Positions 12,514-40,146 of a stretch of DNA of 64,000 nucleotides are shown here, in pieces. This DNA is from Anaeramoeba ignava BMAN (taxonomy: Eukaryota; Protista; Anaeramoebae), in NCBI GenBank assembly GCA_028826165.1, contig JAPDFW010000068.1, forward strand, positions 310,001 to 374,000. The letters are read 5' to 3'. A program made the position numbers and the translations under genes. Position 1 is the first letter of the stretch; the number at the start of each line of letters is the position of its first letter. Below the pieces are notes generated by a model that saw only the letters and a list, made by a program, of their open reading frames with translations, was not told the DNA's origin and did not search any database.

Positions 12514-12524
12514 AAAAAAACCAA

Positions 12525-12725: not shown

Positions 12726-12731
12726 TCATTT

Positions 12732-15700: not shown

Positions 15701-17754
15701 CAAGCAACATGTAAAACTGTTTCATTTTGATTTGTTTTTATATTAATATCAATTCCTTTGGAAATTAAATATTCAATAATTTCAAGTTTTGGATTGTTTC
15801 TACAAACATAATGTAAAACTGTTTCATTATTATTTGTTTTTGTATTAATTTCAATTCCTTTGGAAATTAAATATTCAATAATTTCAATTTTTGGGTTATT
15901 TTGGCAAATAAAATGTAAAGTTGTTTCATTATTATTTGTTTTTATATTAATATCAATTCCTTTGGAAATTAAATATTCAATAATTTCTAAATTTGGGTTA
16001 TTTTGGCAAATAAAATGTAAAACTGTTTCATTATAATTTGTTTTTATATTAATATCAATTCCTTTAGAAATTAAATATTCAATAACTTCAATTTTTGGAT
16101 TGTTTCTAAAAACATAATGTAAAGCTGTTTCATTATTATTTGTTTTTGTATTAATATTAATTCCTTTAGAAATTAAATATTTAATAATTTCAAGTTTTGG
16201 ATTATTTCTACAAACATTATGTAAAATTGTTTCATTATTAGTTGTTTTTGTATTAATATCAATTCCTTTGGAAATTAAATATTCAATAATTTCAAGTTTT
16301 GGATTATTTTGGCAAATAAAATGTAAAGCTGTTTGATTATAATTTGTTTTTGAATTAATATCAATTCCTTTGGAAATTAAATATTCAATAATTTCTAAAT
16401 TTGGGTTATTTTGACAAATAAAATGTAAAATTGTTTCATTATAATTTGTTTTTGAATTAATATCAATTCCTTTGGAAATTAAATATTTAATTATTTCTAA
16501 ATTTAGATTATTTTGGCAAAGATAATGTAAAATTGTTTCATTTTGATTTGTTTTTGTATTAATATTAATTCCTTTGGAAATTAAATATTCAATTATTTCA
16601 AGTTTTGGATTATTTTGGCAAATAAAATGTAAAATTGTTTCATTATTAATGGTTTTTGTATTAATATCAATTCCTTTGGAAATTAAATATTTAATAACTT
16701 GAATTGAATTATGTTTACAAGCAAAATGTAAAATTGTTTCATTTTGAACTGTTTTTGAATTAATATCAATTCCTTTGGAAATTAAATATTCAATAACTTG
16801 AATTGAATTTTTTTGACAAGCATAATGTAAAATTGTTTCATTATTATTTGTTTTTAAATTTATATCAATTCCTTTGGAAATTAAGTATTCAATAATTTGA
16901 ATTGAATTACATTTACAAGCATAATGTAAAACTGTTTCATAATAAACTGTTTTTGAATTAATATTAATTCCTTTGGAAATTAAGTATTCAATAACTTGAA
17001 TTGAATTGTGTTTACAAGCATAATGTAAAACTGTTTGATTATAATCTGTTTTTGAATTAATATCAATTCCTTTGGAAATTAAGTATTCAATAACTTGAAT
17101 TGAATTGTATTTACAAGCATAATGTAAAACTGTTTCATTTTCATCTGTTTTTGAATTAATATCAATTCCTTTGGAAATTAAATATTCAATAATTTGAATT
17201 GAATTTTTTTGACAAGCAAAATGTAAAACTGTTTCATTTATAACTGTTTTTGAATTTATATCAATTCCTTTGGAAATTAAGTATTCAATAATTTGAATTG
17301 AATTGTATTTACAAGCAAAATGTAAAATTGTTTCATTTCTATTTGTTTTTGAATTAATATCAATTCCTTTGGAAATTAAATATTCAATAATTTGAATTAA
17401 TTGATCTTTTTTTAAGTAAATAAATGAATAATGAAGAATTGTTTTTCCTTTTTTATCTTTTGAATTAATATCAATTCCTTTGGAAATTAAATATTCAATA
17501 ATTTCTAAATTTGGATTATTTAAAAATGAAATGTGTAATAAATTTCTTCCTTTTTTATCTTTTAAATTAATATTATCAATTCCTTTTGAAATTAATAATT
17601 CAATTATTTCTTTTGAAATTTGTTTTTTTATTGAAAATTTTAAAATTGATTTTTTTTGATCATTTTCTTTTAATTGTTTTTGTGTAATGGATTCAATTTG
17701 TTTCAATAATTCTTTATTATTTTTATTATTCTCAATAATTTCCCAAATATTCAT
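12732..17754 (-). CDS. Giant ankyrin-repeat (39 repeats) protein with two C-terminal BTB domains; one apparent +1 frameshift at ~13138
   Basis: ORF 13135-17754 (NETxLHxAC...IIEYLISKGIDIN repeats) continues into ORF 12732-13145 (DFTI...IKVHKLILIIRSELFKGMF). The paralog reads EIGIELNWIKQKKG; removing one T from GGA ATT TGA restores EIGIESNWIKQKKG. Confidence 0.88.
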
Positions 17755-17819
17755 TTTAAAAAAATAAAAATGAAAAATGAAAAATGAAAAATGAAAAATG
17801 AAAAATGAAAAATGAAAAA
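17755..17819 (-). promoter_or_regulatory. 65-bp intergenic spacer made almost entirely of (TTTTTCA)x7, Inr-like
   Basis: TGAAAAA repeated at 17771-17819, between the stop of one ankyrin gene and the ATG of the next. Confidence 0.5.
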
Positions 17820-20800
17820 TTAAAAATCTTTAGTTTGATGAAATAAAATTAAATCAATTATTGAATTTGGATTTAATTGATAATAATCTTTTACATCTTC
17901 AAGTTCTTGAATAATAATTTCTTCATTAATTTTATCTTCTTCTAAATCATCATGATAAAAAAAATAAATTAATTGTTGAATTGTTTCAAATGATTTTCTT
18001 GAATAATCATGAACTTGGTTTGAAGAATCTTGAACATTTAATTCAAACATTCCTTTGAATAATTCACTTCTTATTATCAATATTAATTTATGAACTTTGA
18101 TTTCTTTTTCTGAAACAATTATTGTAAAATCTTTTGTTATTTCTTCTTCATATAATTTTGTTAAATCTTTTAATATTCCTTTTCTTCCTTTTTTCTGTTT
18201 TATCCAATTCAATTCAATTCCAATTTCTTTCAAAAATTCTGTAATTTTATTTTCTTTTTCATTTAATTCATTTTGTTCTTGTTTTTGTTCTTCTTGTTTT
18301 TTTTCATTTGGGAATTGAATTTCATTTAAATTTAAATTTAATTTGTTTTGAAGTTCTTGAAAATCTGGAAATCCTGTATAAAGAAAGTTTAAAATAATTT
18401 CAACTTCTTTTTTTGGTTTTAATTTGCAAATATTGATAAATTTTTGGAACATGATTCGATCGTTATCAAATCTTCTTAATAAAATTAATTTATTAACATT
18501 AAATACAAAAGAATCTTTGCTTATAATTTGGAAATCTGAAAAAACTCCATTTAAATTTAATTTTAAAAAATTATTCATATCTTCATTAATTGAATAAATT
18601 TGTGTAAATATTTCAATAAATTCTTTCATTATTTCTTCATCTTCTTCTTCTAAATCAAAAATATTTACATCATTCATTAATAATAATTGTGTTGCTTTTT
18701 GATTTTGATTTTGAATTGATATTGAAAGTGGTGTTTCATTTTTACTTGTTTTTGCATTAATATCAACTCCTTTCGATATTAAATATTTGATAACTTTGAT
18801 TGAATTATTTTGATTTTCACAAGCAAAATGTAGTGCTGTTTCATTCCAATATGTTTTAGCATTAATATCAATTCCTTTGGATATTAAATATTTGATAACT
18901 TCAAATGAATTACATTGACATGCAATATGTAATGCTGTTTCATTTTCATTGGTTTTCGCATTAATATTGATTCCTTGTGATATTAAATACTTGATAACTT
19001 GTAATGAATTGTTTTTACATGCAATGTGTAATGCTGTTTGATCTTCATCAGTTTTACAATTAATATCAATTCCTTTTTCAATTAAATATCTGATAACTTT
19101 GATTGAATTCTTTTGGCATGCAAAGTGTAATGCTGTTTGATTTTCATTGGTTTTGGCATTTAAATCAATTCCTTTTTCAATCAAATATTTGATAACTTTG
19201 ATTGAATTCTTTTGACATGCAATATGTAATGCTGTTTCATTTTGGTTGGTTTTAGCATTAATATCAATTCCTTGTGATATTAAATACTTGATAACTTCAA
19301 ATGAATTATTTTGGCATGCAAAGTGTAATGCTGTTTCATTTTCATTGGTTTTGGCATTAATATCAATTTTTTGTGATATTAAATATTGAATAACTTCAAG
19401 TGAATTTTTTTGACTTGCAATATGTAAAACTGTTTCATTTTTATTGGTTTTAGCATTCATATCAATTCCTTGTGATATTAGATATTTGATAACTTCAACT
19501 GAATTATTGAATAAGCAAACAAAATGTAATGCTGTTTCATTTTTATTGGTTTTTGCGTTAATATCAATTCCTTGTGATATTAGATATTTGATAATTTCAA
19601 GTGAATTAAATCTACATGCAAAATGTAATGCTGTTTGATTTTCTATTGTTTTAGCATTTATATCAACTCCTTTTGATATTAAATATTTGATAAATTCAAT
19701 AGAGTTATTTTGACATGCTAAATGTAATATTGTTTGATTTCTGTTCGTTTTGCAATTAATATCAAGTCCTTTGGAAATTAAATAATCAATAACTTGAATT
19801 GAATTGTTTTTTGATGCAAAATGTAAAACTGTTTCATTTCTATTGGTTTTGCAATTAATATCAAGTCCTTTGGAAATTAAATAATCGATAACTTCAACTG
19901 TATTGCTTTGACATGCATAATGTAAAAGTGTTTCATTTTGACTTGTTTTTTGATTAATATCAAGTCCTTTGGAAATTAAATAATCAATAACTTCAACTGT
20001 ATTGTGTTTACATGCAATATGAAGTGTTGTTTCGTTCCAATAGGTTTTTGCATTTATATCAATTTCTTTTGAAAATAAATATTTGATAACATCAACTGAA
20101 TTTTTTTCACTTGCAAAATGTAAAACTGTTTGATTGAAATTTGTTTTTTCGTTGATATATAATCCTTTGGAAATTAAATATTCAATAACTTCAACTGAAT
20201 TGTTTTGACATGCAAAATGAAGAATTGTTTCGTTTCTATTGGTTTTTGCATTGATATCTAATTTTTGTGATATTAGATATTGAATAACTTCAAGTGAATT
20301 TTTCTGACATGCAACATGTAATGCTGTTTTATTCCAAAATTTTGTTTTGGCATTAATATCAACTCCTTTGGAAATCAAATATTGAATAACTTCAACTGAA
20401 TTATTTTGACATGCAAAATGTAATGATGTTTCATTTTGATTTGTTTTGCAATTAATATTAGCTTCTTTAGAAATTAGATATTTGATAACATCAACTGAGT
20501 TTTTCTGACATGCAACATGTAATGGTGTTTTGTTTTGATTTGTTTTAGAATTAATATCAATTCCTTTAGAAACCAAATATTTGATAACTTGAATTGAATT
20601 TTTTTGACATGCAAAATGTAAAATTGTTTCATTGAATTTTGTTTTAGAATTAATATCAATTCTTTGTGAAATTAAATATTTGATAACTTGAATTGAATTA
20701 CTTTGACATGCAAAATGTAATACCGTTTCATTTTGATTTGTTTTTGCATTAATATCTAATCCTTGTGAAATTAGGAATTTGATAGTTTTAAGTGAGTTTT

Positions 20801-22346
20801 TCTGGCATGCTAAATGTAATCCTGTTTCATTTTTAATTGTTTTGGCATTAATATCAATTCCTTTAGAAATCAAATACTTGATAACTTGAATTGAATTTTT
20901 TTGACATGCAAAATGAAATGGAGTTCTACTTGTTTTTGTTTTAGAATTGATATCAATTCCTTTAGAAAGTAAATATTCAATAATTTTACATGAATTTTTT
21001 TGTGAAACAAAATGTAATGCTGTTTCATTTTCATTTGTTCTCGCATTAATATCAATTCCTTTTGAGATTAAGTATTCAATAATTTCAAGTGAATTATTTT
21101 GACATGCAAAATGTAATATTGTTTCATTTTGGCTTGTTTTTGAATTTAAATCAGCACCTTTGGAAACTAAATATTTGATAACTTTGATATTATTTTTTTG
21201 ACAAGCAAAATGTAAAGGAGTTCTATTGTTTTTGGTTTTAGAATCTATATCAATTCCTTGTGAGACTAAGTATTCTATAACATCAAGTGAATTATCTTGA
21301 CATGCGAAATGTAATACTGTTTTGTTTTCATCTGTATTTGCGTTTAAATCAATTCCTTTTGAAATTAAGTATTCTATAACATCAAGTGAATTATTTTGGC
21401 ATGCATAATGTAAAACTGTTTTGTTTTGATTTGTTTTGGCATTTAAATCAACTCCTTTGGAAATTAAATATTTGATAACTTGAAGTGAATTACTTTGACA
21501 TGCGTAATGTAAAACTGTTTCATTTTGATTTGTTTTTGCATTTAAATCAACTCCTTTGGAAACTAAATATTGAATCATTTCGATTGATTTTTTTTGGCAA
21601 GCAAAATGTAAAATTGATTGATTTTGAGTTGTTTTTGCATTTATATCAATTCCTTTTGAAATTAGGTATTTAATAACTTCAAATGAACTATTTTTTTGAC
21701 AAGCAAAATGTAAAGCTGTTTTATTTTGTTTTGCTTTTGAATTGAAATTAACTCCTTTGGAAATTAAAAATTTAACAAATTCAATTTGAAAATTTTTGAT
21801 AATTGCAATATGTAAACAATTTCTTCTTAATTTATCAACTGAATTTATTTTAGCTCCTTTTTCAATTAATTTTTCAATCATTTCTTTTGAAACTTTTTTT
21901 TCTATTGCAAAATTTAAAATTGGTTTATTTTGTTTTTCAAAATCTTTTTCTGAAATTGTTTTAATTTGGTTTAATAAATTTAAGTTATTTTGTTTAATAA
22001 TTTTAGATATTAAGAAATTATTTTCATTTAAATTTAAATTTGTATTTAAATTTGTATTTGTATTTAAATTTGTATTTAAATTTTCATTTGTATTTGTATT
22101 TGTATTTGAATTTTCATTTGAATTTAAATTTAAATTTGTATTTATATTTGTATTTAAATTTGTATTTTCATTTAAATTTGAATTTGTATTTGTATTTGAA
22201 TTTGTATTTAAATTTGAATTTAAATTTGTATTTGTATTTGAATTTGTATTTGAATTTGAATTTGTATTTATATTTGAATTTATATTTGTATTTGAATTTT
22301 CATTTGAATTTAAATTTGTATTTGCAAGATTATTTGAAATATTCAT
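17820..22346 (-). CDS. Giant ankyrin-repeat (32 repeats) protein with N/T-rich N-terminus and two C-terminal BTB domains; tandem paralog of 12732-17754
   Basis: Intact 1508-aa ORF. Its C-terminus is closely similar to the neighbour (FIEIFTQIYSINEDMN, KENKITEFLKEIGI, VHDYSRKSFETIQQLIY). Confidence 0.92.
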   Translation of the reverse strand: MNISNNLANTNLNSNENSNTNINSNINTNSNSNTNSNTNTNLNSNLNTNSNTNTNSNLNENTNLNTNINTNLNLNSNENSNTNTNTNENLNTNLNTNTNLNTNLNLNENNFLISKIIKQNNLNLLNQIKTISEKDFEKQNKPILNFAIEKKVSKEMIEKLIEKGAKINSVDKLRRNCLHIAIIKNFQIEFVKFLISKGVNFNSKAKQNKTALHFACQKNSSFEVIKYLISKGIDINAKTTQNQSILHFACQKKSIEMIQYLVSKGVDLNAKTNQNETVLHYACQSNSLQVIKYLISKGVDLNAKTNQNKTVLHYACQNNSLDVIEYLISKGIDLNANTDENKTVLHFACQDNSLDVIEYLVSQGIDIDSKTKNNRTPLHFACQKNNIKVIKYLVSKGADLNSKTSQNETILHFACQNNSLEIIEYLISKGIDINARTNENETALHFVSQKNSCKIIEYLLSKGIDINSKTKTSRTPFHFACQKNSIQVIKYLISKGIDINAKTIKNETGLHLACQKNSLKTIKFLISQGLDINAKTNQNETVLHFACQSNSIQVIKYLISQRIDINSKTKFNETILHFACQKNSIQVIKYLVSKGIDINSKTNQNKTPLHVACQKNSVDVIKYLISKEANINCKTNQNETSLHFACQNNSVEVIQYLISKGVDINAKTKFWNKTALHVACQKNSLEVIQYLISQKLDINAKTNRNETILHFACQNNSVEVIEYLISKGLYINEKTNFNQTVLHFASEKNSVDVIKYLFSKEIDINAKTYWNETTLHIACKHNTVEVIDYLISKGLDINQKTSQNETLLHYACQSNTVEVIDYLISKGLDINCKTNRNETVLHFASKNNSIQVIDYLISKGLDINCKTNRNQTILHLACQNNSIEFIKYLISKGVDINAKTIENQTALHFACRFNSLEIIKYLISQGIDINAKTNKNETALHFVCLFNNSVEVIKYLISQGIDMNAKTNKNETVLHIASQKNSLEVIQYLISQKIDINAKTNENETALHFACQNNSFEVIKYLISQGIDINAKTNQNETALHIACQKNSIKVIKYLIEKGIDLNAKTNENQTALHFACQKNSIKVIRYLIEKGIDINCKTDEDQTALHIACKNNSLQVIKYLISQGININAKTNENETALHIACQCNSFEVIKYLISKGIDINAKTYWNETALHFACENQNNSIKVIKYLISKGVDINAKTSKNETPLSISIQNQNQKATQLLLMNDVNIFDLEEEDEEIMKEFIEIFTQIYSINEDMNNFLKLNLNGVFSDFQIISKDSFVFNVNKLILLRRFDNDRIMFQKFINICKLKPKKEVEIILNFLYTGFPDFQELQNKLNLNLNEIQFPNEKKQEEQKQEQNELNEKENKITEFLKEIGIELNWIKQKKGRKGILKDLTKLYEEEITKDFTIIVSEKEIKVHKLILIIRSELFKGMFELNVQDSSNQVHDYSRKSFETIQQLIYFFYHDDLEEDKINEEIIIQELEDVKDYYQLNPNSIIDLILFHQTKDF

Positions 22347-22432
22347 TTATTATTAAGAAAAAGAAAAAAATGAAAAAAATGAAAAAAATTTTTTTTTTAA
22401 ATTATTTAATTAATTTTTTTTTAATTAATTAT

Positions 22433-25400
22433 TTAATTATTATAATTTGAAAATCGAGAAAAATCTTGATAATTTGGATTATTTTCTGGATTATCTAAAT
22501 CTCGATATTTTCTTTGTGAATTTTGATATGAAATTTCTTGTTTATATCTTGGATTTGGTTTTCCTCTAAAATTCCCTCTTCTAACAAATTCTTGATTTTG
22601 TTTTTGTTGATTTAAAATTGAATTTGAATTTGTATTTGTATTTGTATTTTGTTGTTGATTTTGATTTTGATTATTATGATGATGATGGCGATGATGATGA
22701 TGATGAGATGTTGAAGAAGAATCTGTTGTATATTTTCTTTCAAATCCTCTTGATCTTGGAATTTGTTGTTTTTGTGAATTATTCCATTCATTATTAATAT
22801 TAGTATTATTATTATTATTAGTATTAGTATTATTATATTGATTTCTTCTATCAATTTGTTGATTATTCAAAAATATATTATTTTGTGGTATTCTTGCAAA
22901 ATTTTGTGTTTGTAATGTTTGTTGTTTTGGAATTAAAATTTGTTGTTGTGGTTGTTGTAATTGTAATTGTGATTGTAATTGTAATTGTAATTGTGGTTGT
23001 GGTGTTGTTAATATTTGTCTTGGTATAATTGATGGAATTGCTCCATGTATTGGTGGTAATTGTTGTAATGGTATTTGTGATCTTAAAGATGGTATTATTG
23101 GATTTTGAGGTGTGAATATTGTTTGTCTTCCAATTCCTGTTATTTCTGGTATTTCAATATTATTTCCATATCTTCCAATACTTTCATTTCTTGTATTTTC
23201 TTTATCTCTTCTTATATTTTCTCTTGCTCGTTTTTGTGTTTCATATTTTTGTGTTTCTTCTTCATTTCTTCCTTTTGGAATTGTTTCATTTTTTAAGTTT
23301 CTTTTTCTTGTTTGTTTGGGTTGTGTTGATTCTTGATATTTTCTTTTTGAAATATTTTACAAGTTCTTCTAATTCTGTAAAAACTTTATCAAATATTTGG
23401 AATCCATTTGGTGAAATTGAAATATATACTTTTTTCACTGTTGTGTTTGGAAGAAAACAAAATTCAAATTTTCCTCCATATTTCTTTGAATTCACAATAA
23501 AATATGGTATTCTTTTGGGATTGTTTTCTTTTTCTTTTTTCAATTCTTTTTCAATTTCTTCTTCATCTTCAATATTTTTAAATGAATTAAATTCAAGCAT
23601 ATCATCAACATAACTACTTATTGTTTCAACAAATCCTGCTTTGATTTCATCTAAATCATCATATTTCTGGTTTCTAATAATCAAAACTTTTCCAATAACA
23701 AATGGATTTGCTTTATCTTCTTCAATAACATCTTCATGTAATATAATTTCATCATTAAATTTCCAAGAAAGTGTAAGATGATTAATTCCTTTGGAACTTG
23801 GTCTGAAAATTAATGAATCTCTTGGTTTATCTTTAAGAAAACTTTCTGCTTGTTGATATGTTATGTTTTTGAAATATGGATGAACTATTGCTCTTGGTTG
23901 ATATATTCTTTTATCTTCTTGTACTTTTAATTTCTCTTCAATCATTTTTTCTTCTTTGTTTCTATCAAAATATTCTTCAGTTATTCCCATCATCATATTT
24001 TCTTTAGATTCAACTTCTTCTTTTTTACTTGTTAATTCAATCAAAAATCTATCTTCTTTAATACTCATTACTTTACATATTAATACTTCTCCAACTTTGA
24101 TAATTTTATCAAGTTCAATATCTTCTTTTCTTCTTCTTTCTCTTCTGTTATCTTCCTTATCTTTATCTTTATCTTTATCTTCTTCTTTTTTTTCTATTGT
24201 TAAATTTCTTTTATGAATAAATCCAGTTAATCCATTTGTAAGTCTGCAATAAATTCCTTTTTCATTTATAATTTTGAAAACTGTTGCTTCAACTAAACAT
24301 CCTTCTTTTAAAGTTTCTTCAGTTTCTCCTGAAAGTAAATAAAATAATTCTTTGGGTGTTAAATCTCGATATTTGAATCTTGGATCTGCAAATGGGTTAC
24401 TAAGTTCATTTTTGATTAATTTGATTGTTTCCATTTTTTCGACTTCCCATACATTTTCTTCAACAAGTTTTTTAGCAAATGTTTCTAAATCTAATTTATT
24501 GAGTATTTCTGGATGATCCATAATAAATCTAGTTTTTTTACGAATTTCTTTTTCTTCATTTGTAATTGTTTTTTTTCTTCTTTCAATGTTTTCTTCATAA
24601 TTTTCTTCATAATCATAATCATCTCCAAATCTTCTAACAACCATTTCATCTTCATTTTCTTCATTTTCATCTTCATCTTCATAATCATCTATTGTTCCAA
24701 TATCATTTCTATTTGTTTCTCTTTCTTTCATTGCAATATCATAACATTCATCACATATTTTCTTAGCAAGTGTATAATTTTCTGGATGTATTCTTGTTTT
24801 ATCTAATGGTTCTGAACTATTTTTGAATCGAATAAATCCTGAACAATTTCGAAATACATTTTCTGGAAACAATTTCTGTTTCATAAAAACTTTCTCTTGA
24901 ATTGATATATTTTTTGTTTGCAATTTGTCTTATTATATATTGTGATTTTCTTACTCCCAATCCTGGAATAAATGGTAATATATTCGCTATTTGTGGTTGT
25001 TCTTGTATTTTATCAATATCTATTCCTACTTGGCTTACAACATCTACAATTTTCCATATTAGAATTTGTTTTAATTCTTTTTGGAATGAAATGTTTAAGT
25101 GGATGTAATGGTAGATAAACTGCATTGTTTACTGTTTTGTAAACAAGTCCTGATATTTCAAGAATTGGATTTTGTAATCTTCTTGCTAAACTAATTGAAT
25201 GTCGAATTACAACATTTTTTGTTGGGAATTCTTCTTCGGATTTTTTACTATTGCTATAAATTTGTGCAACATCAGATTCAATAAATGTAACTTGAATATC
25301 TTTTTTGATTTTGGTTTTGATAAGTACTAAAATATCATCATATATTTTACGACAAATTAATGAATTTGTTCCAATAACAATAACATGTGGTTTGCATTCT

Positions 25401-28400
25401 TTGATAAATTTAATTAATTTCAAAGATATCTTTTTGTTTTCTTTGTTTATCTATTTCTCGAACATTTATTCCTTGATCTCTTTTCAAGAAATATTTAAGT
25501 TTAATTGAATCTACATAATTTCCTTTTTCGTTTATCAATGATAATCCAAGTGGTAAATTATTTGATAGATAAGAACATCCAATAATTCTGAATCCTTTGT
25601 TTTTCTCAAATGGTTTTCCATAAATATCTTTTTTTTCATCATTTTCATTTTTGATTTCTTCTTGTAATTCGTTATTATTATTATTATCATTATCATTTTC
25701 TGTTGAATTCCATCCATCATTATTATTATTATTGTTATTATTATTATTATTATTTTCTGTTGAATTCCATCCATCATCATTATTATTTTGAATTTCAGTT
25801 GAATTCCATCCATCATCATTATTATTTTGAATTTCAGTTGAATTCCATCCTAAATCTTTATTATCATTTTCAGTTGAATTCCATCCTAAATCTTGATTTT
25901 CATTTTCAGTTGAATTCCATCCTAAATCTTTATTTTCGGTTTTATTTTCATTTTCAGTTGAATTCCATCCTAAATCTTTATTTTCGGTTTGATTTTCATT
26001 TTCAGTTGAATTCCATCCTAAATCTTGATTTTCAGTTTTATTATCATTTTCAGTTGAATTCCATCCTAAATCTTTATTTTCAGTTTTATTATCAGTTTCA
26101 GTTGAATTCCATCCTAAATCTTTATTTTCGGTTTTATTATCAGTTTCAGTTGAATTCCATCCTAAATCTTGATTTTCGGTTTTATTATCAGTTTCAGTTG
26201 AATTCCATCCTAAATCTTGATTTTCAGTTTTATTATCAGTTTCTGTTGAATTCCATCCTAAATCTTGATTTTCAGTTTTATTATCATTTTCAGTTGAATT
26301 CCATCCTAAATCTTGATTTTCAGTTTTTTTATCATTTTCAGTTGAATTCCATCCATCATTTTCATTTTCATTTTCATTTTCATTATTATTGATTGAATTC
26401 CATCCATCATTTTTATTATTTTGAGTTTCTGTTGAATTCCATCCATCATTTTCATTTTCATTAATTGAATTCCATCCATCATTTTGATTTTGATTTTGAT
26501 TTTGATTTTGATTTTGATTTTTGATTTTGATTTTGATTTTCATTATAACTCATTTTATTTCTTTTTTTATTCATTCTTAATATTTCTTGTTCTTGAAGAT
26601 CTGGATATTCAATAGAATCTTCTGGGAAAAGTTTTGGAATATTATTTTCTTGTTTATTTGAATAATTTGATGGTATAAATGCTCCTGATAAAAGCATTTC
26701 TTCTAATTTAGTTCCACATTTTTCTTTCACAAGTTCAATAGTTTCTGATATTAAAATAAATTTTAATTCTTGCTCAAAATATGGTATTAATTTCTTTAAT
26801 ACATTTCGAATAATTATTCTTCTTTGTTTATTCCATTTCTTTGTTATTTCTGTTTTTTCTTTGCTTAAATATAATTCTTCCATTGGTTTTTGAATTTCTT
26901 CATATTTTCTTTGTTTTTCATTTTCATTTTTATTTTTATTTTTATTTCTATTTCTATCATTATTATTATTATTATTAATATCATCTCTAATATTTTCTTC
27001 ATTTTCTTTATTATTTTCTAAATCAAGTTCTAAATCTTCATCTTCTTCATCATCTTCATCTTCATCTTCATCATTTTCATTTAAATCATTATTTGAAATT
27101 GCTTTAATAGGTAATTCAATTTTAATATTAATAAATCCTTCTTTTTCAGCTTTAACAATCCATAAAAATTGTTCATCATTAAATGCTTTGCTTGGTTTTT
27201 CTTTGATAAGTTTTAAATTTCCATAAATATGAAATGTATCAATTTCTTTTTTTCCTTTTTCTGTTGGTTCTGTTGATATTCTTGCAAATTTCTTAAATAA
27301 TATTCTTAATGATGATCTTATATTTGGATCAGAAATTATTTCTTGTTCAAGAATATATCTTGCTCCTCTTAATGCTTCTCCTCGTGTTGGGAATTCTCTT
27401 GATAGAAAATCTAATGCAATATCTTCAGGCTCTCGAATAGAATCATGTGGTGTATAAACTCTTTCTCCATGAATTAAATTCATTCCAAATTTAAATGATG
27501 ATATTCCAAATACATCTGCAAGTTTACGAAGTCTTTTGATTCCAATTAAATATCTACTTTTATTTATATTTGTTGTTTGTTTCTTTTGTTTATTAATTTC
27601 ATGATTAAGTTGAAAATATTGATAAATATCATCAATTTCTTGTTCACTTTGACTTTCTTCAAGAAGTTCAAAAACATCATGTTCTTCTCTTGTGAAAAAT
27701 CTTCTTCCTCTTTCATTTTCATTTTCATCATTTTCATCATTTTCATCATTTTCTTGTTCTTGTTCTTCTCTTTCAATTACTTCTTCATACATTTTCTTAA
27801 AAAATTCTTTTCTTAAACATAAATGTTCATATTTTTGTTTCCATTTATAAAGTATCCATAAATCATATCTTTTCAATTCATAAAGATATTGTTCTTTTCT
27901 ATACATCGTGATAAATCCTATTTCTAATTTTTCTTTATCCATCAATTTTAATATATTTAATATCTTTTTTTGAAGAGATGCTGATGTTGCTCTTTCAGGA
28001 AATCCATATGTTTGAATCCATGCTGCTTCTTTTAAATAATCTTCTTCTCTAAATTTTCTTATATTTCTCAATTTTTCATTTTCTTCTAATTGTAATCTTT
28101 CTGGAATATCTTTTTTCAAAATAATTTCATCTTTTTCAGTAAGAAATCTTTCTTCAAGTTCTGTTTTTGTGTATCTATTTTTAAGAATATCATAAATATT
28201 CGTTTCTCTTTCTTTTTCTTTTTCTCTTTTAAGTCTTTCCAAAGTATTTCTTTGAATTCTTAAATATTCATCTTCATCATCATTTTCATTTTCATTAATT
28301 TCTTCTCCATCAAAATTATCATTTTGGTTTGATGGAATTTCATTTTCTTCAATTTCTCCAAATAATGATTCTAAATATTGTTTTCTTGTCATTTTACTAT

Positions 28401-31060
28401 GTGATTCTTCTTGAAAATTTGAATTTTTTTGATGAATTTTTGATGTTTCATTTTGTGTATTTTGTGATTGGTTTGTTTGACTTCTATTTTTGAAAACATT
28501 TAATATTGTATTTTTTGTTGATTGAGATAATTCTGGATATCTTGAATTATCAAAATCTTCAAAATCTTCAGAATCATCAGAATATTGTGTTGCTTTTATT
28601 TTATCCTTTTCATTTTCATTTTCATTTTCATTTTCATTATAATTATCTACAATAAATGAATTATAACTTTCTATTTTTTTATAAATGAATTTTATAAATT
28701 AATTTTAAATTTTATGAATTTTATAAATGAATTTTACCATCTTTTTTTTGATTTTCTAAATGATATTTATTATCATCTTCATCTTCATCTTCATCAGTTG
28801 ATAAAAAATTTTCATTATCTATTGTATCAATTTCAATATCAGATTCATCATCTGAATTTATTGTTGAATCTTCAATATTTTCTTGTTTTTTTTCAAATCT
28901 TGTATCTAATACATCTTCTTGAATAATATCATCAATTTCTCCATCTGAAAATTCTTCAATTTTATCTAATTTTCAAAAAGAAATATAATTTAAATTTATT
29001 TATATATTTTATATTTAAATTTATTTATATTTATATTTTTATATTTAAATTTATTTATATATTTTATATTTAAATTTATTTATATATTTTATATTTATTT
29101 TATATTTATATATTTTATATTTAAATTTATTTTTTATACATTTAATTTTTTTTTATATTTATATTTTTTATTTTAAATTTATTTTTATATTTATTTTTAT
29201 TTATATTTTTATATTTAAAATTATTTATATATTTTAAATTTATTTATATATTTTATATTAAAATTTATTTATATATTTTATATTTTAGGTTGTTTTTTTA
29301 TTTTTATTTGTTTTTTTTTATTTATTTTTTATTTAAATTTTCATTTTATATATTTTTATATTTTTAATTTAAGGTTTTTTATATTTTTATTTTAAATTTA
29401 TTTTTTATATTTTATTATTTTAAATTTATATTTATTTTTTATTTTATATTTAAATTTTTTTTTTATTTTTATATTTAAATTTTTTTATTTTTATTTAATT
29501 TTATATTTTTTTTATATTTTATGTTTATTTTTTATTTATATTTATATTTTTTATATTTTAAATTTTATTTTTTTATGTTTATTTTATTTTTATATTTTTA
29601 AATTTGTTTATTTTGTTTTTATATTTGTTTTTATTTATATTTAATTTGTTTATATATTTTATATTTAAATTTATTTATATTTTTTATATTTAGGTTTATT
29701 TTTTTTATTTTTTTTTATTTTTATTTTTATTTTTATATTCAAATTTATTTATATATTTTATATTTTTATATTTATTTTTGTTTAAATTTATTTATATTTT
29801 ATATTTTATGTTTTATATTTTTTACATTTATGTTTAAATTTGTATTTTTTTTTTATTTATTTTATTTAAATTTTTTTATATATAAATATTTAATTTTTAT
29901 ATTTTTTATTTAAATTTTTTTATATATTTTTATTTTTATTTTAATTTTATTTATTTTTATATTTTATATTTAAATTTATTTGTTTATTTATTTTTATATT
30001 TATTTATTTATGTATTTTTTATGTATATTTTTTTATGTTTTATGTTTTTGTTTATTTTTTATTTTATATTTTATATTTTAAATTTGTTTATATTTATTTT
30101 AGGTTTTATTTATATGTTTTTATTTATATATATTTTATATTTTTTTGTTCCATTTATATATATTTTAGGTTGTTTATAATCATTTAAAGTTGTTTATATT
30201 TTTATATTTAAAAGGTTATTTTATATATTTTATATTTAGGTTATTTAAATATTTTTTATATATTTAAATTTACATTTTTTATATATTTATTATTTTTTTT
30301 TATTTTATATTTTTATTTTATGTTTTTATATATTTTATATTTATTTATTTTATATTTTTATGTTTATAATTTATTTTATATATTTTATATTTAAGTCTTA
30401 TTTATATATTTTATATTTTAGTTTTATTATATATTTTTATATTTTTTATTTTTATATTTTTATATTTTATATTTTAAAATTTATTTTTTATTTATTTTAT
30501 ATTTATTTAGTTATTTTATATTTAAAATTTAAGTTTTTATGTATTTTTATATTTTATTTATTTATAATTTTATTTTATATGTTTTATATTTAAGTTGTTT
30601 GTTTATATTTTATATTTAAAAATTTTTATATTTATTTTATATTTTTTATATTTTTGTTTATATATTTTATATTTTAAATTTATATATTTATATTTAAAAT
30701 TTTATTTTATATTTTATTTTATATTTATTTTATTTTTTTATATTTTATTTATTTATATATTTTTATGTTTAAATTTATTTTATATATTTTAAATTTATTT
30801 ATTTTATATTTTTTATTTTAGTTTTATATTTTTTTTTTAATTTATTTTATTTTTTATTTTTATAATTTTATATTTATTTTTGTTTATTTTTTCATTTTTT
30901 TATTTTTTTCTTTTCATTTTTATTATTTTTTTCATTTTTTCTTTTCATTTTTTCATTTTTCTTTATTTTCATCATTTTCATCATTTTCATCATAATAATC
31001 ATCTTTATTATCATCATCATCATCTTCATCTTCAAAAACTGGAATAAATCTTCTTCTCAT
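22433..31060 (-). CDS. SPT6: Transcription elongation factor / histone chaperone SPT6, left copy, with internal GW-repeat insert; five apparent 1-nt insertions (~26520, 25420, 25080, 24885, 23345)
   Basis: Acidic N-terminus with SFIVD, then DIPERLQL, YRKE, STEPTEKGKKEIDTFH, YqgF (KPHVIVIG, SLARRLQNP), HhH (FIPGLGVRK), LDKTRIHPENY, an S1 domain and tandem SH2 (HPYFKNI...RPSSKGINHLTLSWK). ATG at 31060, exon 2 at 28965-28738, exon 3 from 28671. The exon-1 donor is not resolvable in this noisy copy. Confidence 0.93.
25700..26480 (-). repeat. Coding minisatellite in SPT6: 18 GWNS motifs, core 48-bp (16 aa, DLGWNSTENDNKTENQ) unit
   Basis: GAATTCCATCC occurs 18 times on the + strand (25705-26467), at exact 48-bp spacing from 25912 to 26344. 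Confidence 0.95.
28970..30880. repeat. SPT6 intron 1 (left), degenerate 25-bp AT tandem repeat, low-quality sequence
   Basis: TTATATTTAAATTTATTTATATATT-like units; mirror of 59312-61245. Confidence 0.7.
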
Positions 31061-31210
31061 TTTAATTTTAATTTAAATTTAAATTGAAATTTTAATTGAA
31101 ATTTGAAAAAATGAAAAAAAAAATGAAAAAAAAATTTTTATTTTTATTTTTTTTTTTAAATAAAATAGAAATAAATAATAAAAGAAATAATAAAAGAAAT
31201 AATAATAAAA

Positions 31211-34200
31211 ATGTTTTTTAATGGAGAATTTACTGAAAAAAAAGTTGTTTCAATGCGTGGATTAAGGTAAAAATTGTTTTAAAAAATTTTAATTTTTATT
31301 TTTTAATTATTTTTTTTCTTTTTTTTTAAAATTAAAAAAAATTAAAATTAAAAAAAAAAGTAAAAAATCAAAAGATAAAGAAAAATTAATTGAAAATGTT
31401 AATATTGAAAGAAAAAAAAGAAAAGAAGAAAAAATTGAAAAAGAAAGTGCAATTAAAATTCAATCTTTCTTTAGAAATAGAATTCAAATTTTAAATGAAA
31501 AAAAAATTCAAAGAGAAATTTATGATCAAAATCAAAATGAAAATCAAAATAAAAATGAAATCAAAAAAATCAAAATCAAAATCAAAATCAAAATCAAAAT
31601 CAAAATCAAAATCAAAATCAAAATCAAAATGAAAATCAAAATCAAAATCAAAATCAAAATGAAAATCAAAATCAAAATCAAAATCAAAATGAAAATCAAA
31701 ATCAAAATCAAAATCAAAATGAAAATGAAAATCAAAATCAAAATGAAAATCAAATTCAAATTCAAAATCAAAATCAAAATCAAAAAGAAAATGAAATTAA
31801 TGAAGAAATATTTCATAAAAATATAAGTAGAATATGCTTTTTTTATTCACAATCAGAATCAAAAGATATTTCTCGTTTATTAACTGCTTGTTTTAATATT
31901 TTTCATCACAAATCAACTTTCTTCAAATTTGAAAATTCAATTTATTTACTCAAAAAAATTCTTTATCATTGTTTATCAACAATTTCAAATCTTTCTATTC
32001 AAAATGAAAAAGAAAAGAAAATAATAGATGGTCTTTCTCATTTTGTTTTATGTTTTACTGATGTTTCTTATCTCAATAATAATAATAATGATACTAACGA
32101 TACACTTCTTCAAATATTTAATTATTTGATTTCAAATAATTTTTATAATTTTATGAGAAATTTCTTTATCAAAAATACATTCATCAAAAATCAATTTCCA
32201 AAATCTCAAACTGAAGATGAAAAAATTATTATTCAATTTTTTTCTTTATGTCTCAGACCTTTAAATCTTCAAAGAAATATAACAAAAGAATCAATTTTAC
32301 AATTACAAAATCAAAATCAAAATCAAAATCAAAATCAAAATCAAAATCAAAATCAAAATCAAATTCAAAATCAAAATCAAAATCAAAATCAAAAACAAGT
32401 TCAAAATAATTGGATTGATCCATTCATTTCATTTGGAATCAATATTTTATCAATTCCTTTATTTTCTTATCGATTTCCTGAAAATATTGTTTTATTATTC
32501 AAAAGTTCATTTTTCTTTCAAGAAACACTTAATAGATTAGGAAATTATTTAAATGATTGGTCAAATTTACCAAAATCATTTGATAATCAAAATCAAAATC
32601 AAAATCAAAATCAAAATCAAAATCAAAATCAAATTCAAATTCAAAATCAAAATCAAAATCAAAATCAAAATAATGAAGAAACAATTCCAACAAGTATTTG
32701 GATGCTTGGAAACTTACTTCAATTAAAATTTAAAAATCCAAAAATTAATAATAATCCTCAATTAATTCATGTTTATGCAAAAACAATTTCAAAATTAATT
32801 TCAAAATCTCCTAAAAATTGTTTAGGTGTAGATTTATTATTTTCAAAAAATCAAAATCAAAATCAAAATCAAAATAATAATAATAACAATAATAAAAATA
32901 ATAATAATAACCAAAATGAAAATCAAAATGAAAATCAATTCCCAAAATATATACTTCCAGATTTACTCATAAATCAACTTTCAATCATGTATACAAAAGA
33001 ACATATTATGGAACTTTTCCAAGTTTTACTTAAATCAAATAATTCAAAAAACAATTCAAAAATATTAAATTCATTATGTAAATTAATTGTTAATGTTTTA
33101 ATAAGAGATGAAAATGTTTCTCAAAGTATTGTTTCTAAAATTGCTTATAATTATGATTTAATCAAAATAATTTACAAAGAATTAATTAATCAAGATTTTA
33201 ATCATTTTTGTTTAAAATTTCAAAATCAAAACAAATTTAAAATCAATTTCCAAAATTCAAATCAAAAAGAAAAGAAAAAGAAAAAGAAAAGAATAAAAAT
33301 AAAAATAAGAATATAATTAATATTGGATTAGTTTTCTTATCAAGTTATGAAAGTCTTTTATATATTTTAGATGATGTTGAATTTTTGAAGAACAAAAACC
33401 TTTATCAATTCAACAAGTTTTATCACTTTCAACTTCATTAAAAATGTTTTTATACAATTCATTTTATTCTCCATCTTTCAAAAGAAAATCTCAAAATCAA
33501 ATTTCATTTCAAAACAATCAACAAAAATCAAATTATTGAAAAAAATTTCATTAAAATTACTCAATTCACTTTATCAAAGAAATTCACGAAAATCATTTAC
33601 ATCAAAAATCATTGGCAACTTCAACAAATTAATTCAAATTCATTTATTGGAGAAATTTATTCTGAAGAGAAAAGTGGAAATAATGGGCCAGCTCATAAAA
33701 TATTAAAGAAAATTCCATTTTTCATTCCATTTGATATTCGACTTCAAATTTTCAAACGTAAAATTGCAGAAAATAAATTACAATTTATTGAAAATCCACA
33801 AAATCAAGAACCTGTTTATATTACGATAAGAAGAAATTATCTTGTTGATGATGGATTCAAAGAACTTAATCAAATCAATTTAAAAAAACAAATTCGAGTA
33901 AGATTTATTGATAAATTTGGAGAAGAAGAACCAGGAATTGATGGAGGAGGAATATTTAAAGAATTCTTAATCGAACTTTCCAAAACAATTTTTCAAGCTG
34001 ATTATGGATTATTTCTTAATACAGAACAAAATTTTATTTATCCAAATCCATCAAGCAATTTTGTAAATTCTGAAGATAAAGAATTATTTGAATTTTGTGG
34101 GAAAATAATCGCAAAATGTATTTATGATGGAATTCTTGTTGATATTCCATTTGCAAATTTCTTTCTTACCAAAATGCTTGGGAAATATAATTATATTCAT

Positions 34201-34878
34201 GATCTTTCTTCTCTTGATCCATTTCTTTATAAAAGTTTAATGTATCTCAAAACTTATCAAGGAAATTTTGAAGATCTTGAACTTAGTTTCACATTAACAG
34301 ATAATTTAGTTGGAGGAAATTCAATAACTGAACTTGTTAAAGGAGGAAATAAAATCAAAGTTTCCAAAGAAAATGTTATTCGATATATTTATCTTGTTTC
34401 TCATTATAAATTAAATGAACAAATCAAAACACAAAGTTTATCTTTTCTTCAAGGATTTTCAGAATTAATTCCATCAATTTGGATTAAAATGTTTTCACAA
34501 AATGAACTTCAAATGTTAATTTCAGGAGATGAACATAATATTGATATTCATGATTTAATGATGAATACCAAATTAGTTAATTTCAAACCAAATGATTCAA
34601 CAATTAGATTTTTATGGGAAGTTTTAAATGAATTTGGATTTCAAGAAAGATCATTATTTTTAAAGTTTGTAACAAGTACAGAAAGAGCACCACTTCTTGG
34701 ATTTAAAACTTTTCAACCACAATTTACAATTCAAAAAGCAGGAGATGATAGAAGAAGATTACCAACTTCATCAACTTGTTCAAATTTATTAAAATTACCA
34801 AAATATAAAACAAAAGAAGAATTAAGAGATAAACTTAAACTTGCAATTTCTCAAAGTACTGGTTTTAATTTTGCTTAA
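31211..34878 (+). CDS. UBE3C: UBE3C/Hul5-like IQ-HECT E3 ubiquitin ligase, left copy, broken by several 1-nt homopolymer deletions (~33285, 33385, 33525, 33605); intron 31267-31360
   Basis: MFFNGEF...VSMRG start, IQSFFR IQ motif, and HECT motifs (GIDGGGIFKEF, LPTSSTC, GFNFA). Colinear with the intact copy at 55228-59009. Confidence 0.82.
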
Positions 34879-35003
34879 AACATTTAAAATTAAAAAGAAA
34901 AAAAGAATTTGAAATTTGAATTTATTTTTTGAAAAGAATTTTTAAAAAGAATTTTTAAAAGAATTTTTAAAAAGAATTTTTAAAAGAATTTTTAAAAGAA
35001 TTT

Positions 35004-38000
35004 TTAAAAGAATTTTGATTCATCTTCATTCATTTTTTTCCAATATAAAAATGCAGCTCCAAAAACAATTTCTAATATGAATAAAATTATCCAATATCTT
35101 ATTTTTTTTCTTTTTTCAATTCCTTCTGGTAATTTTTCTGTTTCTCCTTGATAATTTTCAACAATTTCTAAATATATTTTTTTAGTTGATTCAATAATTG
35201 TTGGAATTTTTTGAACTTTATCTTTTAAAATATTAACTTCATTAATCATTTTAGGTCTTTCTTTTTTATCATCTTCAATTATAATTTCTTTTAATTCATT
35301 TAATCCAATAATTACTTTATCAATTTCACTTTTTTCTTCTGAAATTGTTCTATTTTAAATTAAAATTAAAATTAAAATTAAAATTAAAATTAAAATTAAA
35401 AATTAAATTAAATTTTTACTTAATCATTAAAGAAAATTCTTCTTGAAATTTTTGAATTAATTCTGATGATGATAATTCTTCATTTGTTTTTAATTGTTGA
35501 TTTAAAGTTTTTTCAATTTTTTCTTTTAATGAATTTGTTGATTTTTGAATTGAAATAACATTATTAACTGCTTTTAATATTGATTTTGTTTCTTCATTAA
35601 AATCAATCAAATAATCTTTTTCTTCATATTTTTTTGTTTTTAAATCTTCAATTTTATTTTCAATTTTCTTTTTGATTAATAAAACATTTTCCATTGTTAA
35701 TATTTCTTCTTCTTCTTCATTTTCTTCTTCATCTTCTTCATCTTTAATTTCAATATCTAAATTTTCTACATAAATTTCTTGATAATCTTTTTTTTCATTT
35801 TTATATTTTGATGGTGTTAAATCCATTGTTAAAATTGAAATTAATTCATGTTTATCTATTTTTTATAAATATTTTTTTAAATAATTTTATAATTAATTTT
35901 ATAATTATTTTTATAAATATTTTTATATATAATTTTATAAATAATTTTATAAATAATTTTATAAATAATTTTATATTTAATTTTATTTAATTTTATAAAT
36001 AATTTTATAAATAATTTTATAAATAATTTTATAAATAATTTTATAAATAATTTTATAAATAATTTTATAAATAATTTTATAAATAATTTTATAAATATTT
36101 TTATAAATTAATTTTATAAATAATTTTATAAATAATTTTATAAATAATTTTATAAATAATTTTATAAATAATTTTATAAATATATTTTATAAATAATTTT
36201 ATAAATAATTTTATAAATAATTTTATATTTAATTTTATAAATAATTTTATAAATAATTTAATTTTATAAATAATTTTATAAATAATTTTATAAATAATTT
36301 TAAATATTTTTTAATTTTATAAATAATTTTATAAATAATTTTATAAATAATTTTTGAAATAATTTTTAAATATTTTTGAAATAATTTTATAAATAAATTA
36401 TAATTATTTTTAAATAATTTTTTAAATAATTTTATAAATAATTTTATAAATAATTTTTATAAATAATTTTATATTTAAATTTATATTTAAATTTATAAAT
36501 TTTTATAAATAATTTTTATAAATAATTTTTATAAATATTTTTATAAATAATTTTAAAAATAATTTTATAAATAATTTTAAAAATAATTTTATAAATAATT
36601 TTATAAATATTTTTATAAATAATTTTAAAAATAATTTTATAAATAATTTTAAAAATATTTTTATATATAATTTTTTAAATAATTTTATAAATAATTTTAT
36701 AAATAATTTTATAAATAATTTTATAAATAATTTTATAAATAATTTTATAAATAATTTTATAAATAATTTTATAAATATTTTATAAATAATTTTATAAATA
36801 TTTTTATAAATAATTTTATAAATAATTAATTTTTATAAATAATTTTATAAATAATTTTTATAAATATTTTTATAAATAATTTTATTTAACCTGAAAGTCC
36901 ACCTGTTCTAGCAGAAACTCCAAAATAATATTCTGTTGGTAAATCTACATTTGAAATACTTGAACATTTTATCCATTCTCCTTTTGATCCTAAATCATAT
37001 TCAACCTATTATTTTTTTATTTTTATTTACATTTATATTATTATTTTTATTTATTTTTATTTTTATTATTTATTTATTTACATTAAGAATATTATTAAAA
37101 TAAGTAATTTTGATTTGAGATTCTTTTCCTAAATTTCTTGGTGATAATTCACAAAATCCTCTTACAATATCCATTCCATCTTTATTTCCATTATAAACTA
37201 AATTTCCATCATTTATTACAACTTGTAACATTCCTGGTTCTCCCTTTTATATATATATATATATATATACATACAATTTATATAATTTAATTTTCATTTC
37301 CAAATTAAAATTATAATTATAATAAATACAGATTTATCATTATCATAAGTATCTAAAAATACACCTAATCCAACAAATTTTTCCATATTTCCAAAAACAG
37401 GACCTGATATTCCTTTAAATTTTGTATACCAAAATGCAATTCCATCTGCTCCTACTTTTTTTCCTTCAATATTAAATGTAATTGTACTTGTCCAATATTT
37501 CATATCATTTTTCTATTATTATATTTATATTTATATATATTTATATTTATATTTATATTTATATTTATATTTATATTTATATTTATATTTATATTTATAT
37601 TTATTATTATATTTATATTTATATTTATATTTATATTTATATTTATATTTATATTTATATTAATTTATATTTATATTTATATTTATATTTATATTTATAT
37701 TTATATTTATATTTATGTTTATTTATGTTTATATTTATATTTATGTTTATATATTTATTATTATATTTATTATTATATTTATTATTATTATATTTATTAT
37801 TATATTTTTATATTTATATTTATATTTATATTTATATTTATATTTATATTTATATTTATATTTATATTTATATTTATATTTATTTATATTTATATTTATA
37901 TTTATATTTATATTTATATTTATATTTATATTTTTTATTTTTATATATTTATATTTATATTTTGATTTATATTTATATTTATATTTTATATTTATATTTA

Positions 38001-38914
38001 TATTTATGTTTATATTTTATATTTTATGTTTATATTTTATATTTATATTTATATTTATAATTATATTTATATTTATATTTATATTTATATTTATATTTAT
38101 ATTTATATTTATATTTATATTTATATTTATATTTATATTTATATTTATATTTATATTTATATTTTATATTTATATTTATATTTATGATTTATATTTATAT
38201 TTATATTTATATTTATATTTATATTTATATTTATATTTATATTTATATTTATATTTATATTTATATTTATATTTATATTTATTATTTATATTTATATTGT
38301 TATATTTATATTTATGTTTATATTTTATTTTATATTTATTATTATATTTATATTTATATTTATATATTTATATTTATTATATTTATATTTTATATTTATA
38401 TTTATATTTATATTTATATTTATATTTATATTTATATTTATATTTATTATATTTATATTTATATTTTTATATTTATTATATTTATATTTTATTTTTATTT
38501 ATATTTATTATATTATTTATATTTATATTTATATTTATATTTATATTTATATTTATATTTATATTTATATTTATATTTATATTTATTTTTATATTTATAT
38601 TTATATTTATATTTATATTTATATTTATATTTATATTTATATTTATATTTATTATTATTATTATTATATTTATAAAGGAAAAGAATAAAATGAATAAAAA
38701 TTACTAAATTATTCCAAATAAAACCTTGTTTATCAGTTTTATCTTCTGTTAAAATAATTTTATAACCATCAAGAATTGCATCTTCTCCAATTTGCCAATT
38801 TTTAAGATCTCCTCGAAAACTGTATCTATTTTCAAATAATCTCTTTGTTTCTGTTGTTTCAATCATTATAATTATTATTAAAAAAATCAATAAAAATATT
38901 CTTTTTATTTTCAT
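35004..38914 (-). CDS. L-type lectin cargo receptor, ERGIC-53/LMAN1-like, left copy, 6 exons
   Basis: Signal peptide, [43 protein letters not shown], coiled-coil stalk, TM helix and SKFF tail. Introns include 38704-37513 and 36890-35856. Confidence 0.85.
35856..36890. repeat. Lectin intron 4 made of 12-bp (ATAATTTTATAA)n
   Basis: Visible tandem repeat; 1035 bp here versus 686 bp in the right copy. Confidence 0.85.
37513..38704. repeat. Lectin intron 1 made of (TATATT)n
   Basis: Visible hexamer repeat; 1192 bp here versus 354 bp in the right copy. Confidence 0.85.
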
Positions 38915-39717: not shown

Positions 39718-39719
39718 AA

Positions 39720-40115: not shown

Positions 40116-40146
40116 ATTTCATTTTTTTCTTTTCATTTTTTTTAAA

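What the first reader, a model, noticed from the sequence alone, without database searches (positions are those of the whole stretch)
25620..26670. SPT6 carries an internal 18x GW array: candidate Argonaute-hook platform on a Pol II elongation factor
Seen: a ~350-aa acidic, N/E/T-rich insert lies between KLEEMLLSGAFIP and KGFRIIG (start of the YqgF/RNase H-like domain). It contains 18 GWNS motifs. GW is invariant while spacer length varies from 11 to 19 aa, and a 48-bp core has recently expanded. The array is in frame in the second copy (63715-64000). Established: GW/WG repeats in disordered regions bind the PIWI domain of Argonaute (GW182/TNRC6, S. pombe Tas3, plant NRPE1 and SPT5L/KTF1). Plant SPT6L has a C-terminal WG/GW domain, whereas animal and fungal SPT6 have only a short acidic loop at this position (recalled, not aligned). 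Inference: this protist independently added an Ago hook at a different, internal position, which would couple small-RNA silencing to Pol II elongation. The C-terminal tail here has no GW motifs. G-rich GGA-TGG codons retained in such AT-rich DNA suggest selection.
Basis: partly seen in the sequence, partly recalled or inferred. Interest (0 to 1): 0.88.

Follow-up and report, generated by a model that had tools for sequence, protein, structure and literature searches.

The report
Tryptophan hook array inside protist SPT6
In an anaerobic amoeba, the transcription elongation factor SPT6 carries an expressed, flexible insert of 18-20 Gly-Trp repeats inside its folded core, probably a docking strip for small-RNA silencing proteins like the one plant SPT6 carries at its tail, although binding has not been shown.

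Summary
Observation confirmed. This is Anaeramoeba SPT6 (probably A. ignava), present twice in a large inverted duplication. The copy at the finding has 18 GWNS units and five small frameshifts; RNA shows three of these are assembly errors. The second copy is one open frame with 20 units. Spliced RNA contigs cover the insert, no junction skips it, and AlphaFold predicts it disordered between well-folded domains. The loop segment is about 34 aa in 130 orthologues and 398 aa here. The array passes the published Ago-hook composition score, but the score is Asn-driven, and invariant GW reflects recent tandem amplification, not proven selection. Comparative support is stronger: W/GW-rich tails occur on SPT6 in many non-plant eukaryotes; Anaeramoeba SPT6s lack them, and an A. 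flamelloides paralogue has four conserved W in another internal loop. The genome encodes three Argonautes, those tested PIWI-clade, whose Trp pockets are poorly conserved, plus two WG-array DEAD-box helicases. Best reading: a relocated, amplified Ago-hook-like platform recruiting PIWI to transcribing Pol II (about 0.55). New variant of a known kind. The scan separately noted copy 2 and both helicases.

The parts
22432..31060 (-). SPT6 copy A (left arm of the inverted duplication); start codon 31060; assembly frameshifts near 26515, 25424, 25082, 24865, 23347
   Evidence: RNA contig carries copy-A alleles at 10 of 12 sites with no gaps over three of the frameshifts
25599..26670 (-). Insert of about 357 aa between the long core helix and the YqgF domain (normal linker about 10-22 aa)
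25704..26477 (-). 18 x GWNS array, consensus N-x-[DN]-[LD]-G-W-N-S-T-E, spacing 11-19 aa, acidic, predicted disordered
25896..26405 (.). 48-bp tandem core of the array (10.6 copies, 93% matches)
25016..25598 (-). YqgF/RuvC-like domain directly C-terminal to the array
   Evidence: Pfam PF14639 E=3e-20 on 25016-25450
23289..24929 (-). HHH, S1 and tandem SH2 domains
59161..64000 (+). SPT6 copy B, intact (continues to contig C69:377850; database protein P0001, 2230 aa); exon 1 59161-59311, intron 59312-61245, exon 2 61246-61476, intron 61477-61541
   Evidence: both splice joints seen in RNA contigs
63551..64000 (+). Start of the copy B insert (376 aa, 20 GWNS; 7 GW lie inside the window)
10663..64000 (.). 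Inverted duplication of at least 70 kb centred near 45.5 kb (arms 92-97% identical, running to about window position 80300) that carries both SPT6 copies

Best explanation
The insert is an Argonaute-hook-like tryptophan platform. SHOWN: it is transcribed and in frame, predicted disordered, acidic (net -43), with 18-20 exposed W spaced 11-19 aa apart, and it hangs off the N-terminal edge of the YqgF domain of an otherwise normal SPT6. KNOWN: SPT6 travels with elongating Pol II, nascent RNA passes a groove between its YqgF and S1 domains, and plant SPT6L recruits AGO4/AGO9 through a WG/GW hook. INFERRED: the W residues dock multivalently on small-RNA-loaded PIWI proteins, the only Argonaute type found here, concentrating them on nascent RNA for co-transcriptional scanning. 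The outcome would be cleavage, termination or chromatin marking, possibly with the WG-array DDX5-like helicases. The hook sits in a core loop instead of the tail and was recently amplified by minisatellite expansion.
For: Exonic and in frame. pLDDT about 30 over the array and mostly above 90 in the flanking domains. Karlowski dos score 123 for copy A and 56+73 for copy B, threshold 7. 22 of 99 SPT6 tails carry 3 or more GW/WG, in plants but also Amoebozoa, a malawimonad, a heterolobosean and a Mortierellaceae fungus; a ciliate SPT6 has several too. Anaeramoeba tails have only 1 W, while the hooks appear internally: 20 W here, and 4 W in a different loop of an A. flamelloides paralogue group, unchanged among four sequences whose flanks vary. 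Another SPT6 (P0149, clustering with heteroloboseans) has a 4x GW/WG cluster in a third internal loop. The genome has 3 Piwi-domain genes, two with a DEDH tetrad, and a two-RNase-III + dsRBD gene. Two of the three other GW/WG arrays found genome-wide sit in DDX5/17-like RNA helicases. Precedents: 10.64898/2026.03.25.714125 (SPT6L hook binds AGO4/9); PMC5666084 (Tetrahymena GW proteins Wag1p/CnjBp act with Twi1p, a PIWI-clade protein by my recall); PMC6832287 (RNA groove).
Against: No binding data. The PIWI exons tested are PIWI-clade (E about 1e-69 and 1e-61 to PIWIs, about 1e-36 to AGOs), and the three Trp pockets are mainly an AGO-clade feature (PMC12477606). The array is G-poor (6.7%) and its dos score turns negative without Asn. 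Invariance of GW is explained by recent amplification. A. flamelloides has no W at this loop, and one of its paralogues has no W cluster at all. No RdRP, DNMT or Pre-SET hit (the RdRP and Pre-SET searches had no positive control), so the downstream silencing machinery is unclear. A W array in an SH3 protein shows that W repeats in this genome also arise outside RNA biology.
Confidence: 0.55

Rival explanations
1. A functional W-motif platform with a non-Argonaute partner. The aromatic 'stickers' in an acidic spacer would bind other Trp-pocket proteins (CCR4-NOT subunits, as GW182 does) or drive condensation with the WG helicases and the transcription machinery. The repeated S-T-E-x-D could also be CK2 sites that create phospho-docking motifs.
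For: No AGO-clade gene was found. The authors of 10.1101/2024.01.20.576478 raise CCR4-NOT binding and phase separation as alternatives for the plant hook. Each unit contains S-T-E-x-D/E (the CK2 consensus is recalled). An SH3 protein has a W array.
Against: W is always in a GW context with hook-type spacing and composition. The one SPT6 W-tract tested experimentally binds Argonautes.
Confidence: 0.23
2. A tolerated coding minisatellite. In a genome full of repeat inserts, one W-containing unit was amplified by slippage in a surface loop and is kept only because it stays in frame and disordered.
For: More than 260 tandem repeats in this window alone. The 12-nt core is identical even at synonymous sites. 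Copy number and order differ between the two copies. The array is absent from the sister species at this site.
Against: W is 0.24% in comparable polar low-complexity segments and 6.7% here. The few GW/WG arrays in the genome fall mainly in RNA-handling proteins. W tracts recur on SPT6 across eukaryotes and in another internal loop of the sister species.
Confidence: 0.2
3. Artefact: the array is an intron, or the frameshifted copy is a pseudogene or a misassembly.
For: Copy A has five frameshifts in the assembly, one directly before the array and not covered by RNA. There is a coverage hole at the array's 5' end.
Against: Copy B is open throughout. All 36 spacers are multiples of 3. Spliced RNA contigs run into both ends of the insert and lie within the array, with no skipping joint. 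The RNA has copy-A alleles without the three frameshifts it covers.
Confidence: 0.02

Closest known systems
Plant SPT6L/GTB1 AGO-hook (Arabidopsis At1g65440)
   Same: Same host protein; disordered W-repeat tract; passes the same composition score; plausible role of recruiting Argonaute to Pol II (shown for AGO4/AGO9 in 10.64898/2026.03.25.714125).
   Different: The plant hook is C-terminal, G-rich, irregular and binds AGO-clade proteins. This one is inside the core before YqgF, N/E/T-rich, a regular minisatellite, in a genome where only PIWI-type genes were found and no DNMT hit.
Non-plant SPT6 with W/GW tails (Physarum in PMC9864664; Echinamoeba, Protostelium, Gefionella, Pharyngomonas, Linnemannia, Stylonychia found here)
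   Same: SPT6 carrying several GW/WG motifs in a disordered region outside plants.
   Different: Tail position and 3-20 irregular motifs; none tested for binding.
Tetrahymena Wag1p and CnjBp
   Same: GW-repeat proteins acting with a PIWI-clade Argonaute (Twi1p) in nuclear, nascent-transcript-linked small-RNA selection (PMC5666084).
   Different: Separate proteins, not an elongation factor; no homology tested or implied.
NRPE1 CTD, SPT5L/KTF1, GW182/TNRC6, Tas3
   Same: Rapidly evolving repeat arrays in which W in a GW/WG context is the constant; NRPE1 and SPT5L sit on a polymerase complex.
   Different: Different host proteins, terminal positions and AGO-clade partners. SPT5 of this genome has no GW/WG.

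Membership tests
SPT6 | HtH, YqgF, HhH, S1 and tandem SH2 domains in order after an acidic N-terminus | tested here: met
WG/GW Argonaute hook | Three or more GW/WG motifs | tested here: met
   18 and 20
WG/GW Argonaute hook | Intrinsically disordered context | tested here: met
   pLDDT below 50 for model residues 364-670 (P0001 843-1149)
WG/GW Argonaute hook | Composition score dos of at least 6.99 (Karlowski 2010 matrix) | tested here: met
   122.7 (copy A); 55.6 and 73.1 (copy B); driven by Asn, -21 without it
WG/GW Argonaute hook | Internal composition score ics of at most 2.14, or Wsearch motif score | not tested
   reference matrices not retrieved; G content 6.7% against 21% in plant hooks suggests a poorer fit
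WG/GW Argonaute hook | An Argonaute-family protein is encoded in the genome | tested here: met
   three Piwi-domain loci
WG/GW Argonaute hook | The partner is AGO-clade with conserved Trp pockets | tested here: not met
   two exons tested are PIWI-clade; the third resembles them but was not scored; pocket residues were not aligned to a tool-supplied AGO2
WG/GW Argonaute hook | W-dependent physical binding to an Argonaute | not testable with these tools
   needs pull-down or multimer prediction
Plant-type SPT6L | Hook C-terminal to the tandem SH2 | tested here: not met
   tail of 307 aa with 0 GW/WG

The most novel reading that the evidence does not exclude
A tryptophan hook on SPT6 is an old or repeatedly regained eukaryote-wide feature, not a streptophyte invention. 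In Anaeramoeba it has moved from the tail into core loops (different loops in two species) and binds PIWI-clade proteins through a non-canonical surface. It would be the anchor of a co-transcriptional small-RNA pathway that lacks AGO-clade proteins, RdRP and DNA methylation and uses WG-array DDX5-like helicases.
Probability: 0.3. Interest if true: 0.82.

Novelty: new variant of a known kind. Interest (0 to 1): 0.62.

Why it matters
Recent plant work treats the SPT6 AGO-hook as unique to streptophytes (10.1101/2024.01.20.576478; 10.64898/2026.03.25.714125). This array, with the W-rich SPT6 tails seen here in many protists, suggests that coupling small RNAs to Pol II elongation through SPT6 is much wider. 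It also gives a clean test of an open question, whether and how PIWI-clade proteins bind GW motifs without the AGO-type pockets: one 16-aa unit repeated 20 times and only three candidate partners. If the array proves neutral, it is a caution about calling hooks from composition in AT-rich proteomes.

Tried and rejected
Intron or pseudogene reading: rejected. Codon invariance as proof of selection: rejected as uninformative. ESM Atlas search of the array: best score 0.79, low recognition, no lead. GGTTGG and GATTGG triple scans: mostly reverse strands of Pro/Gln-rich repeats, no further clear arrays. RdRP, DNMT and Pre-SET searches: blank, two without a positive control. SPT5: no GW/WG. Literature searches found nothing on Anaeramoeba RNAi or on internal SPT6 hooks. 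The genome-size look-up did not give the species; A. ignava is inferred because the nearest SPT6s are A. flamelloides at only 38% identity and A. pumila has a 25.8-Mb, about 52% GC genome. The tail count printed used a faulty anchor and was discarded in favour. One alignment script timed out. Spliced PIWI and helicase models were searched exon by exon by reference; the joined step was left out. No peptide-PIWI complex was predicted (single chains only).

Full report
OBSERVATION. Six-frame translation shows 18 GWNS motifs on the minus strand between 26477 and 25704, inside an insert that runs from 26670 (after GAFIP) to 25599 (before KGFRIIG). A 48-bp unit makes up the core. Pfam finds HtH, YqgF, HhH, S1 and SH2 domains around it, so the gene is SPT6. 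A second copy on the plus strand is a single 2112-codon frame with 20 GWNS (database protein P0001). Both lie in an inverted duplication of at least 70 kb centred near 45.5 kb. The closest proteins are Anaeramoeba flamelloides SPT6s at 38% identity, and the query groups with them at support 1.0. The genome is therefore Anaeramoeba, probably A. ignava (inference).

IS IT CODING? Copy A has five frameshifts relative to copy B; outside the array the copies differ by 14 synonymous and 21 other substitutions, the latter mostly in low-complexity tracts, so they are real alleles or paralogues. All spacers between GW units are multiples of three in both copies. The one public run that holds the gene is spliced RNA: its contigs join exon 1 to exon 2 and exon 2 to exon 3 at GT-AG introns. 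They carry copy-A letters at 10 of 12 differing sites and have no gap across three copy-A frameshifts, which are thus assembly errors. Contigs run from the core into the first 30 or so codons of the insert and from its last 20 or so codons into YqgF, short contigs lie inside the array, and no joint skips it. A hole at the array's 5' microsatellite leaves that one frameshift unverified. These are contigs, not reads, so they show presence only; expression of copy B is not shown.

STRUCTURE. AlphaFold2 on residues 480-1660 with 50 sequences gives pLDDT of about 30 across the array and mostly above 90 for the long core helix before it and the YqgF domain after it. The array is 29% N, 13% E, 10% T, 10% D and 6.7% each of G and W, net charge -43. 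In Pol II-SPT6 structures the exiting RNA passes a groove between the YqgF and S1 domains (PMC6832287 citing Vos 2018; PMC12119854). A 300-residue disordered chain attached at the start of YqgF could reach it; I could not measure the distance.

COMPARISON. The segment that holds the insert has a median length of 34 aa in 130 orthologues (maximum 99) and 398 aa here; the linker itself is typically 10-22 aa and acidic in animals and short in fungi. Both A. flamelloides paralogue types have a short, W-free loop here, so the array is recent. One paralogue group has four W (DDW, NWG, GWG, DWN) in a different internal loop, in a block nearly identical among four sequences whose neighbouring low-complexity stretches differ. 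An unnamed SPT6 that clusters with Pharyngomonas has four GW/WG in a third internal loop. C-terminal W/GW tracts are common: 22 of 99 tails have at least three GW/WG. They include plants, Protostelium, Echinamoeba, Gefionella, Pharyngomonas and Linnemannia; Stylonychia has a W-rich tail too, and Physarum was already reported (PMC9864664). All Anaeramoeba tails have a single W. This pattern fits relocation or re-creation of a hook better than a one-off. The sample is not taxon-balanced, many rows lack names, and no root or gain/loss test was run, so ancestry versus repeated gain stays open.

PARTNERS IN THE GENOME. Three Piwi-domain genes. The two last exons tested match PIWI structures far better than AGO (E about 1e-69 and 1e-61 against about 1e-36). 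Two genes read D-E-D-H and one ends in S at the fourth catalytic position (by eye). One gene has two RNase III domains and a dsRBD. No RdRP, DNA methyltransferase or Pre-SET hit (only the DNMT search had ringing controls). SPT5 has no GW/WG. Genome-wide codon scans found three other arrays: two WG arrays upstream of DDX5/17-like DEAD-box motifs, one gene also with a BTB domain, and an FG[GA]WN array in an SH3 protein. These scans need three motifs within fixed distances and miss sparser tracts. Spliced models were searched exon by exon by reference; the joined step was left out.

HOOK TEST. With the published matrix (PMC2910046) the array scores 123 in copy A and 56 plus 73 in copy B, against a threshold of 7 and 100-177 for plant SPT6L tails. 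Without Asn the sum is negative, so the score is inflated in this proteome. The main difficulty is the partner. The three Trp pockets are conserved in AGO-clade proteins and variable in the PIWI clade (PMC12477606), although GW proteins do act with Tetrahymena Twi1p (PMC5666084; the primary paper was not held). The plant SPT6L hook binds AGO4 and AGO9 independently of Pol V (10.64898/2026.03.25.714125).

MECHANISM AND VERDICT. Most likely (0.55) the array is a multivalent W platform that holds small-RNA-loaded PIWI proteins next to nascent RNA on elongating Pol II. Expression, disorder, position and composition are shown; binding, partner and outcome are inferred. Rivals are a W platform for other partners or condensates (0.23), a tolerated minisatellite (0.20) and artefact (0.02). 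It works like the SPT6L hook on the evidence available, but it is not a plant-type SPT6L, and membership of the Ago-hook class is unproven because the partner criterion is unmet and binding is untested. Novelty: new variant of a known kind. Interest 0.62: unusual anatomy and a clean test of GW-PIWI binding, tempered by the known plant and Physarum precedents. Earlier scan notes on copy B and on the two helicases agree, but they are not independent evidence.

Noticed in passing
L054/L061 (G000:C2:268200-272000) and L062/L063 (G000:C46:576200-578500): Two DDX5/17-like DEAD-box helicase genes with long N-terminal WG arrays (DDWGNN-type and DNWGND-type); the C2 gene also has a BTB domain. Candidate PIWI-pathway helicases.
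   Followed up: partly
window 10663-64000 and beyond (to about 80300): Inverted duplication of at least 70 kb with a spacer near 42.7-48.7 kb; arms 92-97% identical, the left arm with several small indel errors. Could be two haplotypes joined head to head or a real palindrome.
   Followed up: partly
P0015, P0161, P0163, P0164 residues about 660-695 (A. flamelloides SPT6): Four conserved W (two in WG/GWG) in a different internal loop; absent from the other paralogue P0014.
   Followed up: partly
P0149 residues 362-424; P0047 residues 650-682: Further SPT6s with internal GW/WG: four in an HtH-region loop (unnamed, clusters with heteroloboseans) and one GWG in the same loop as the finding (Pharyngomonas).
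   Followed up: partly
P0159, P0145, P0232 (Stylonychia) C-terminal tails: SPT6 tails of a clade that includes a ciliate combine WG repeats with CCHC zinc knuckles, recalling CnjBp; these lineages are thought to use PIWI-clade proteins (recalled).
   Followed up: no
L014:4854-5606 (G000:C141): One of the three PIWI genes has Ser in place of the fourth catalytic His, so it is probably a non-slicer.
   Followed up: partly
L049:2769-4751 (G000:C72): SH3-domain protein with PTFG[GA]WNVK repeats and PNLPTRGR repeats; probably an endocytic or cytoskeletal adaptor.
   Followed up: partly
L051:1979-5524 (G000:C64): Intronless 1182-codon frame with two RNase III domains and a dsRBD, no helicase or PAZ hit: a minimal Dicer- or Drosha-like enzyme.
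   Followed up: partly
window 13135-22346: Two tandem ankyrin-like repeat genes of about 1500 aa (102-bp and 99-bp periods) next to SPT6, mirrored in the other arm.
   Followed up: no
window 59312-61245 and about 28980-30900: SPT6 intron 1 is a 1.9-kb, almost pure A/T satellite and is correctly spliced in RNA.
   Followed up: yes
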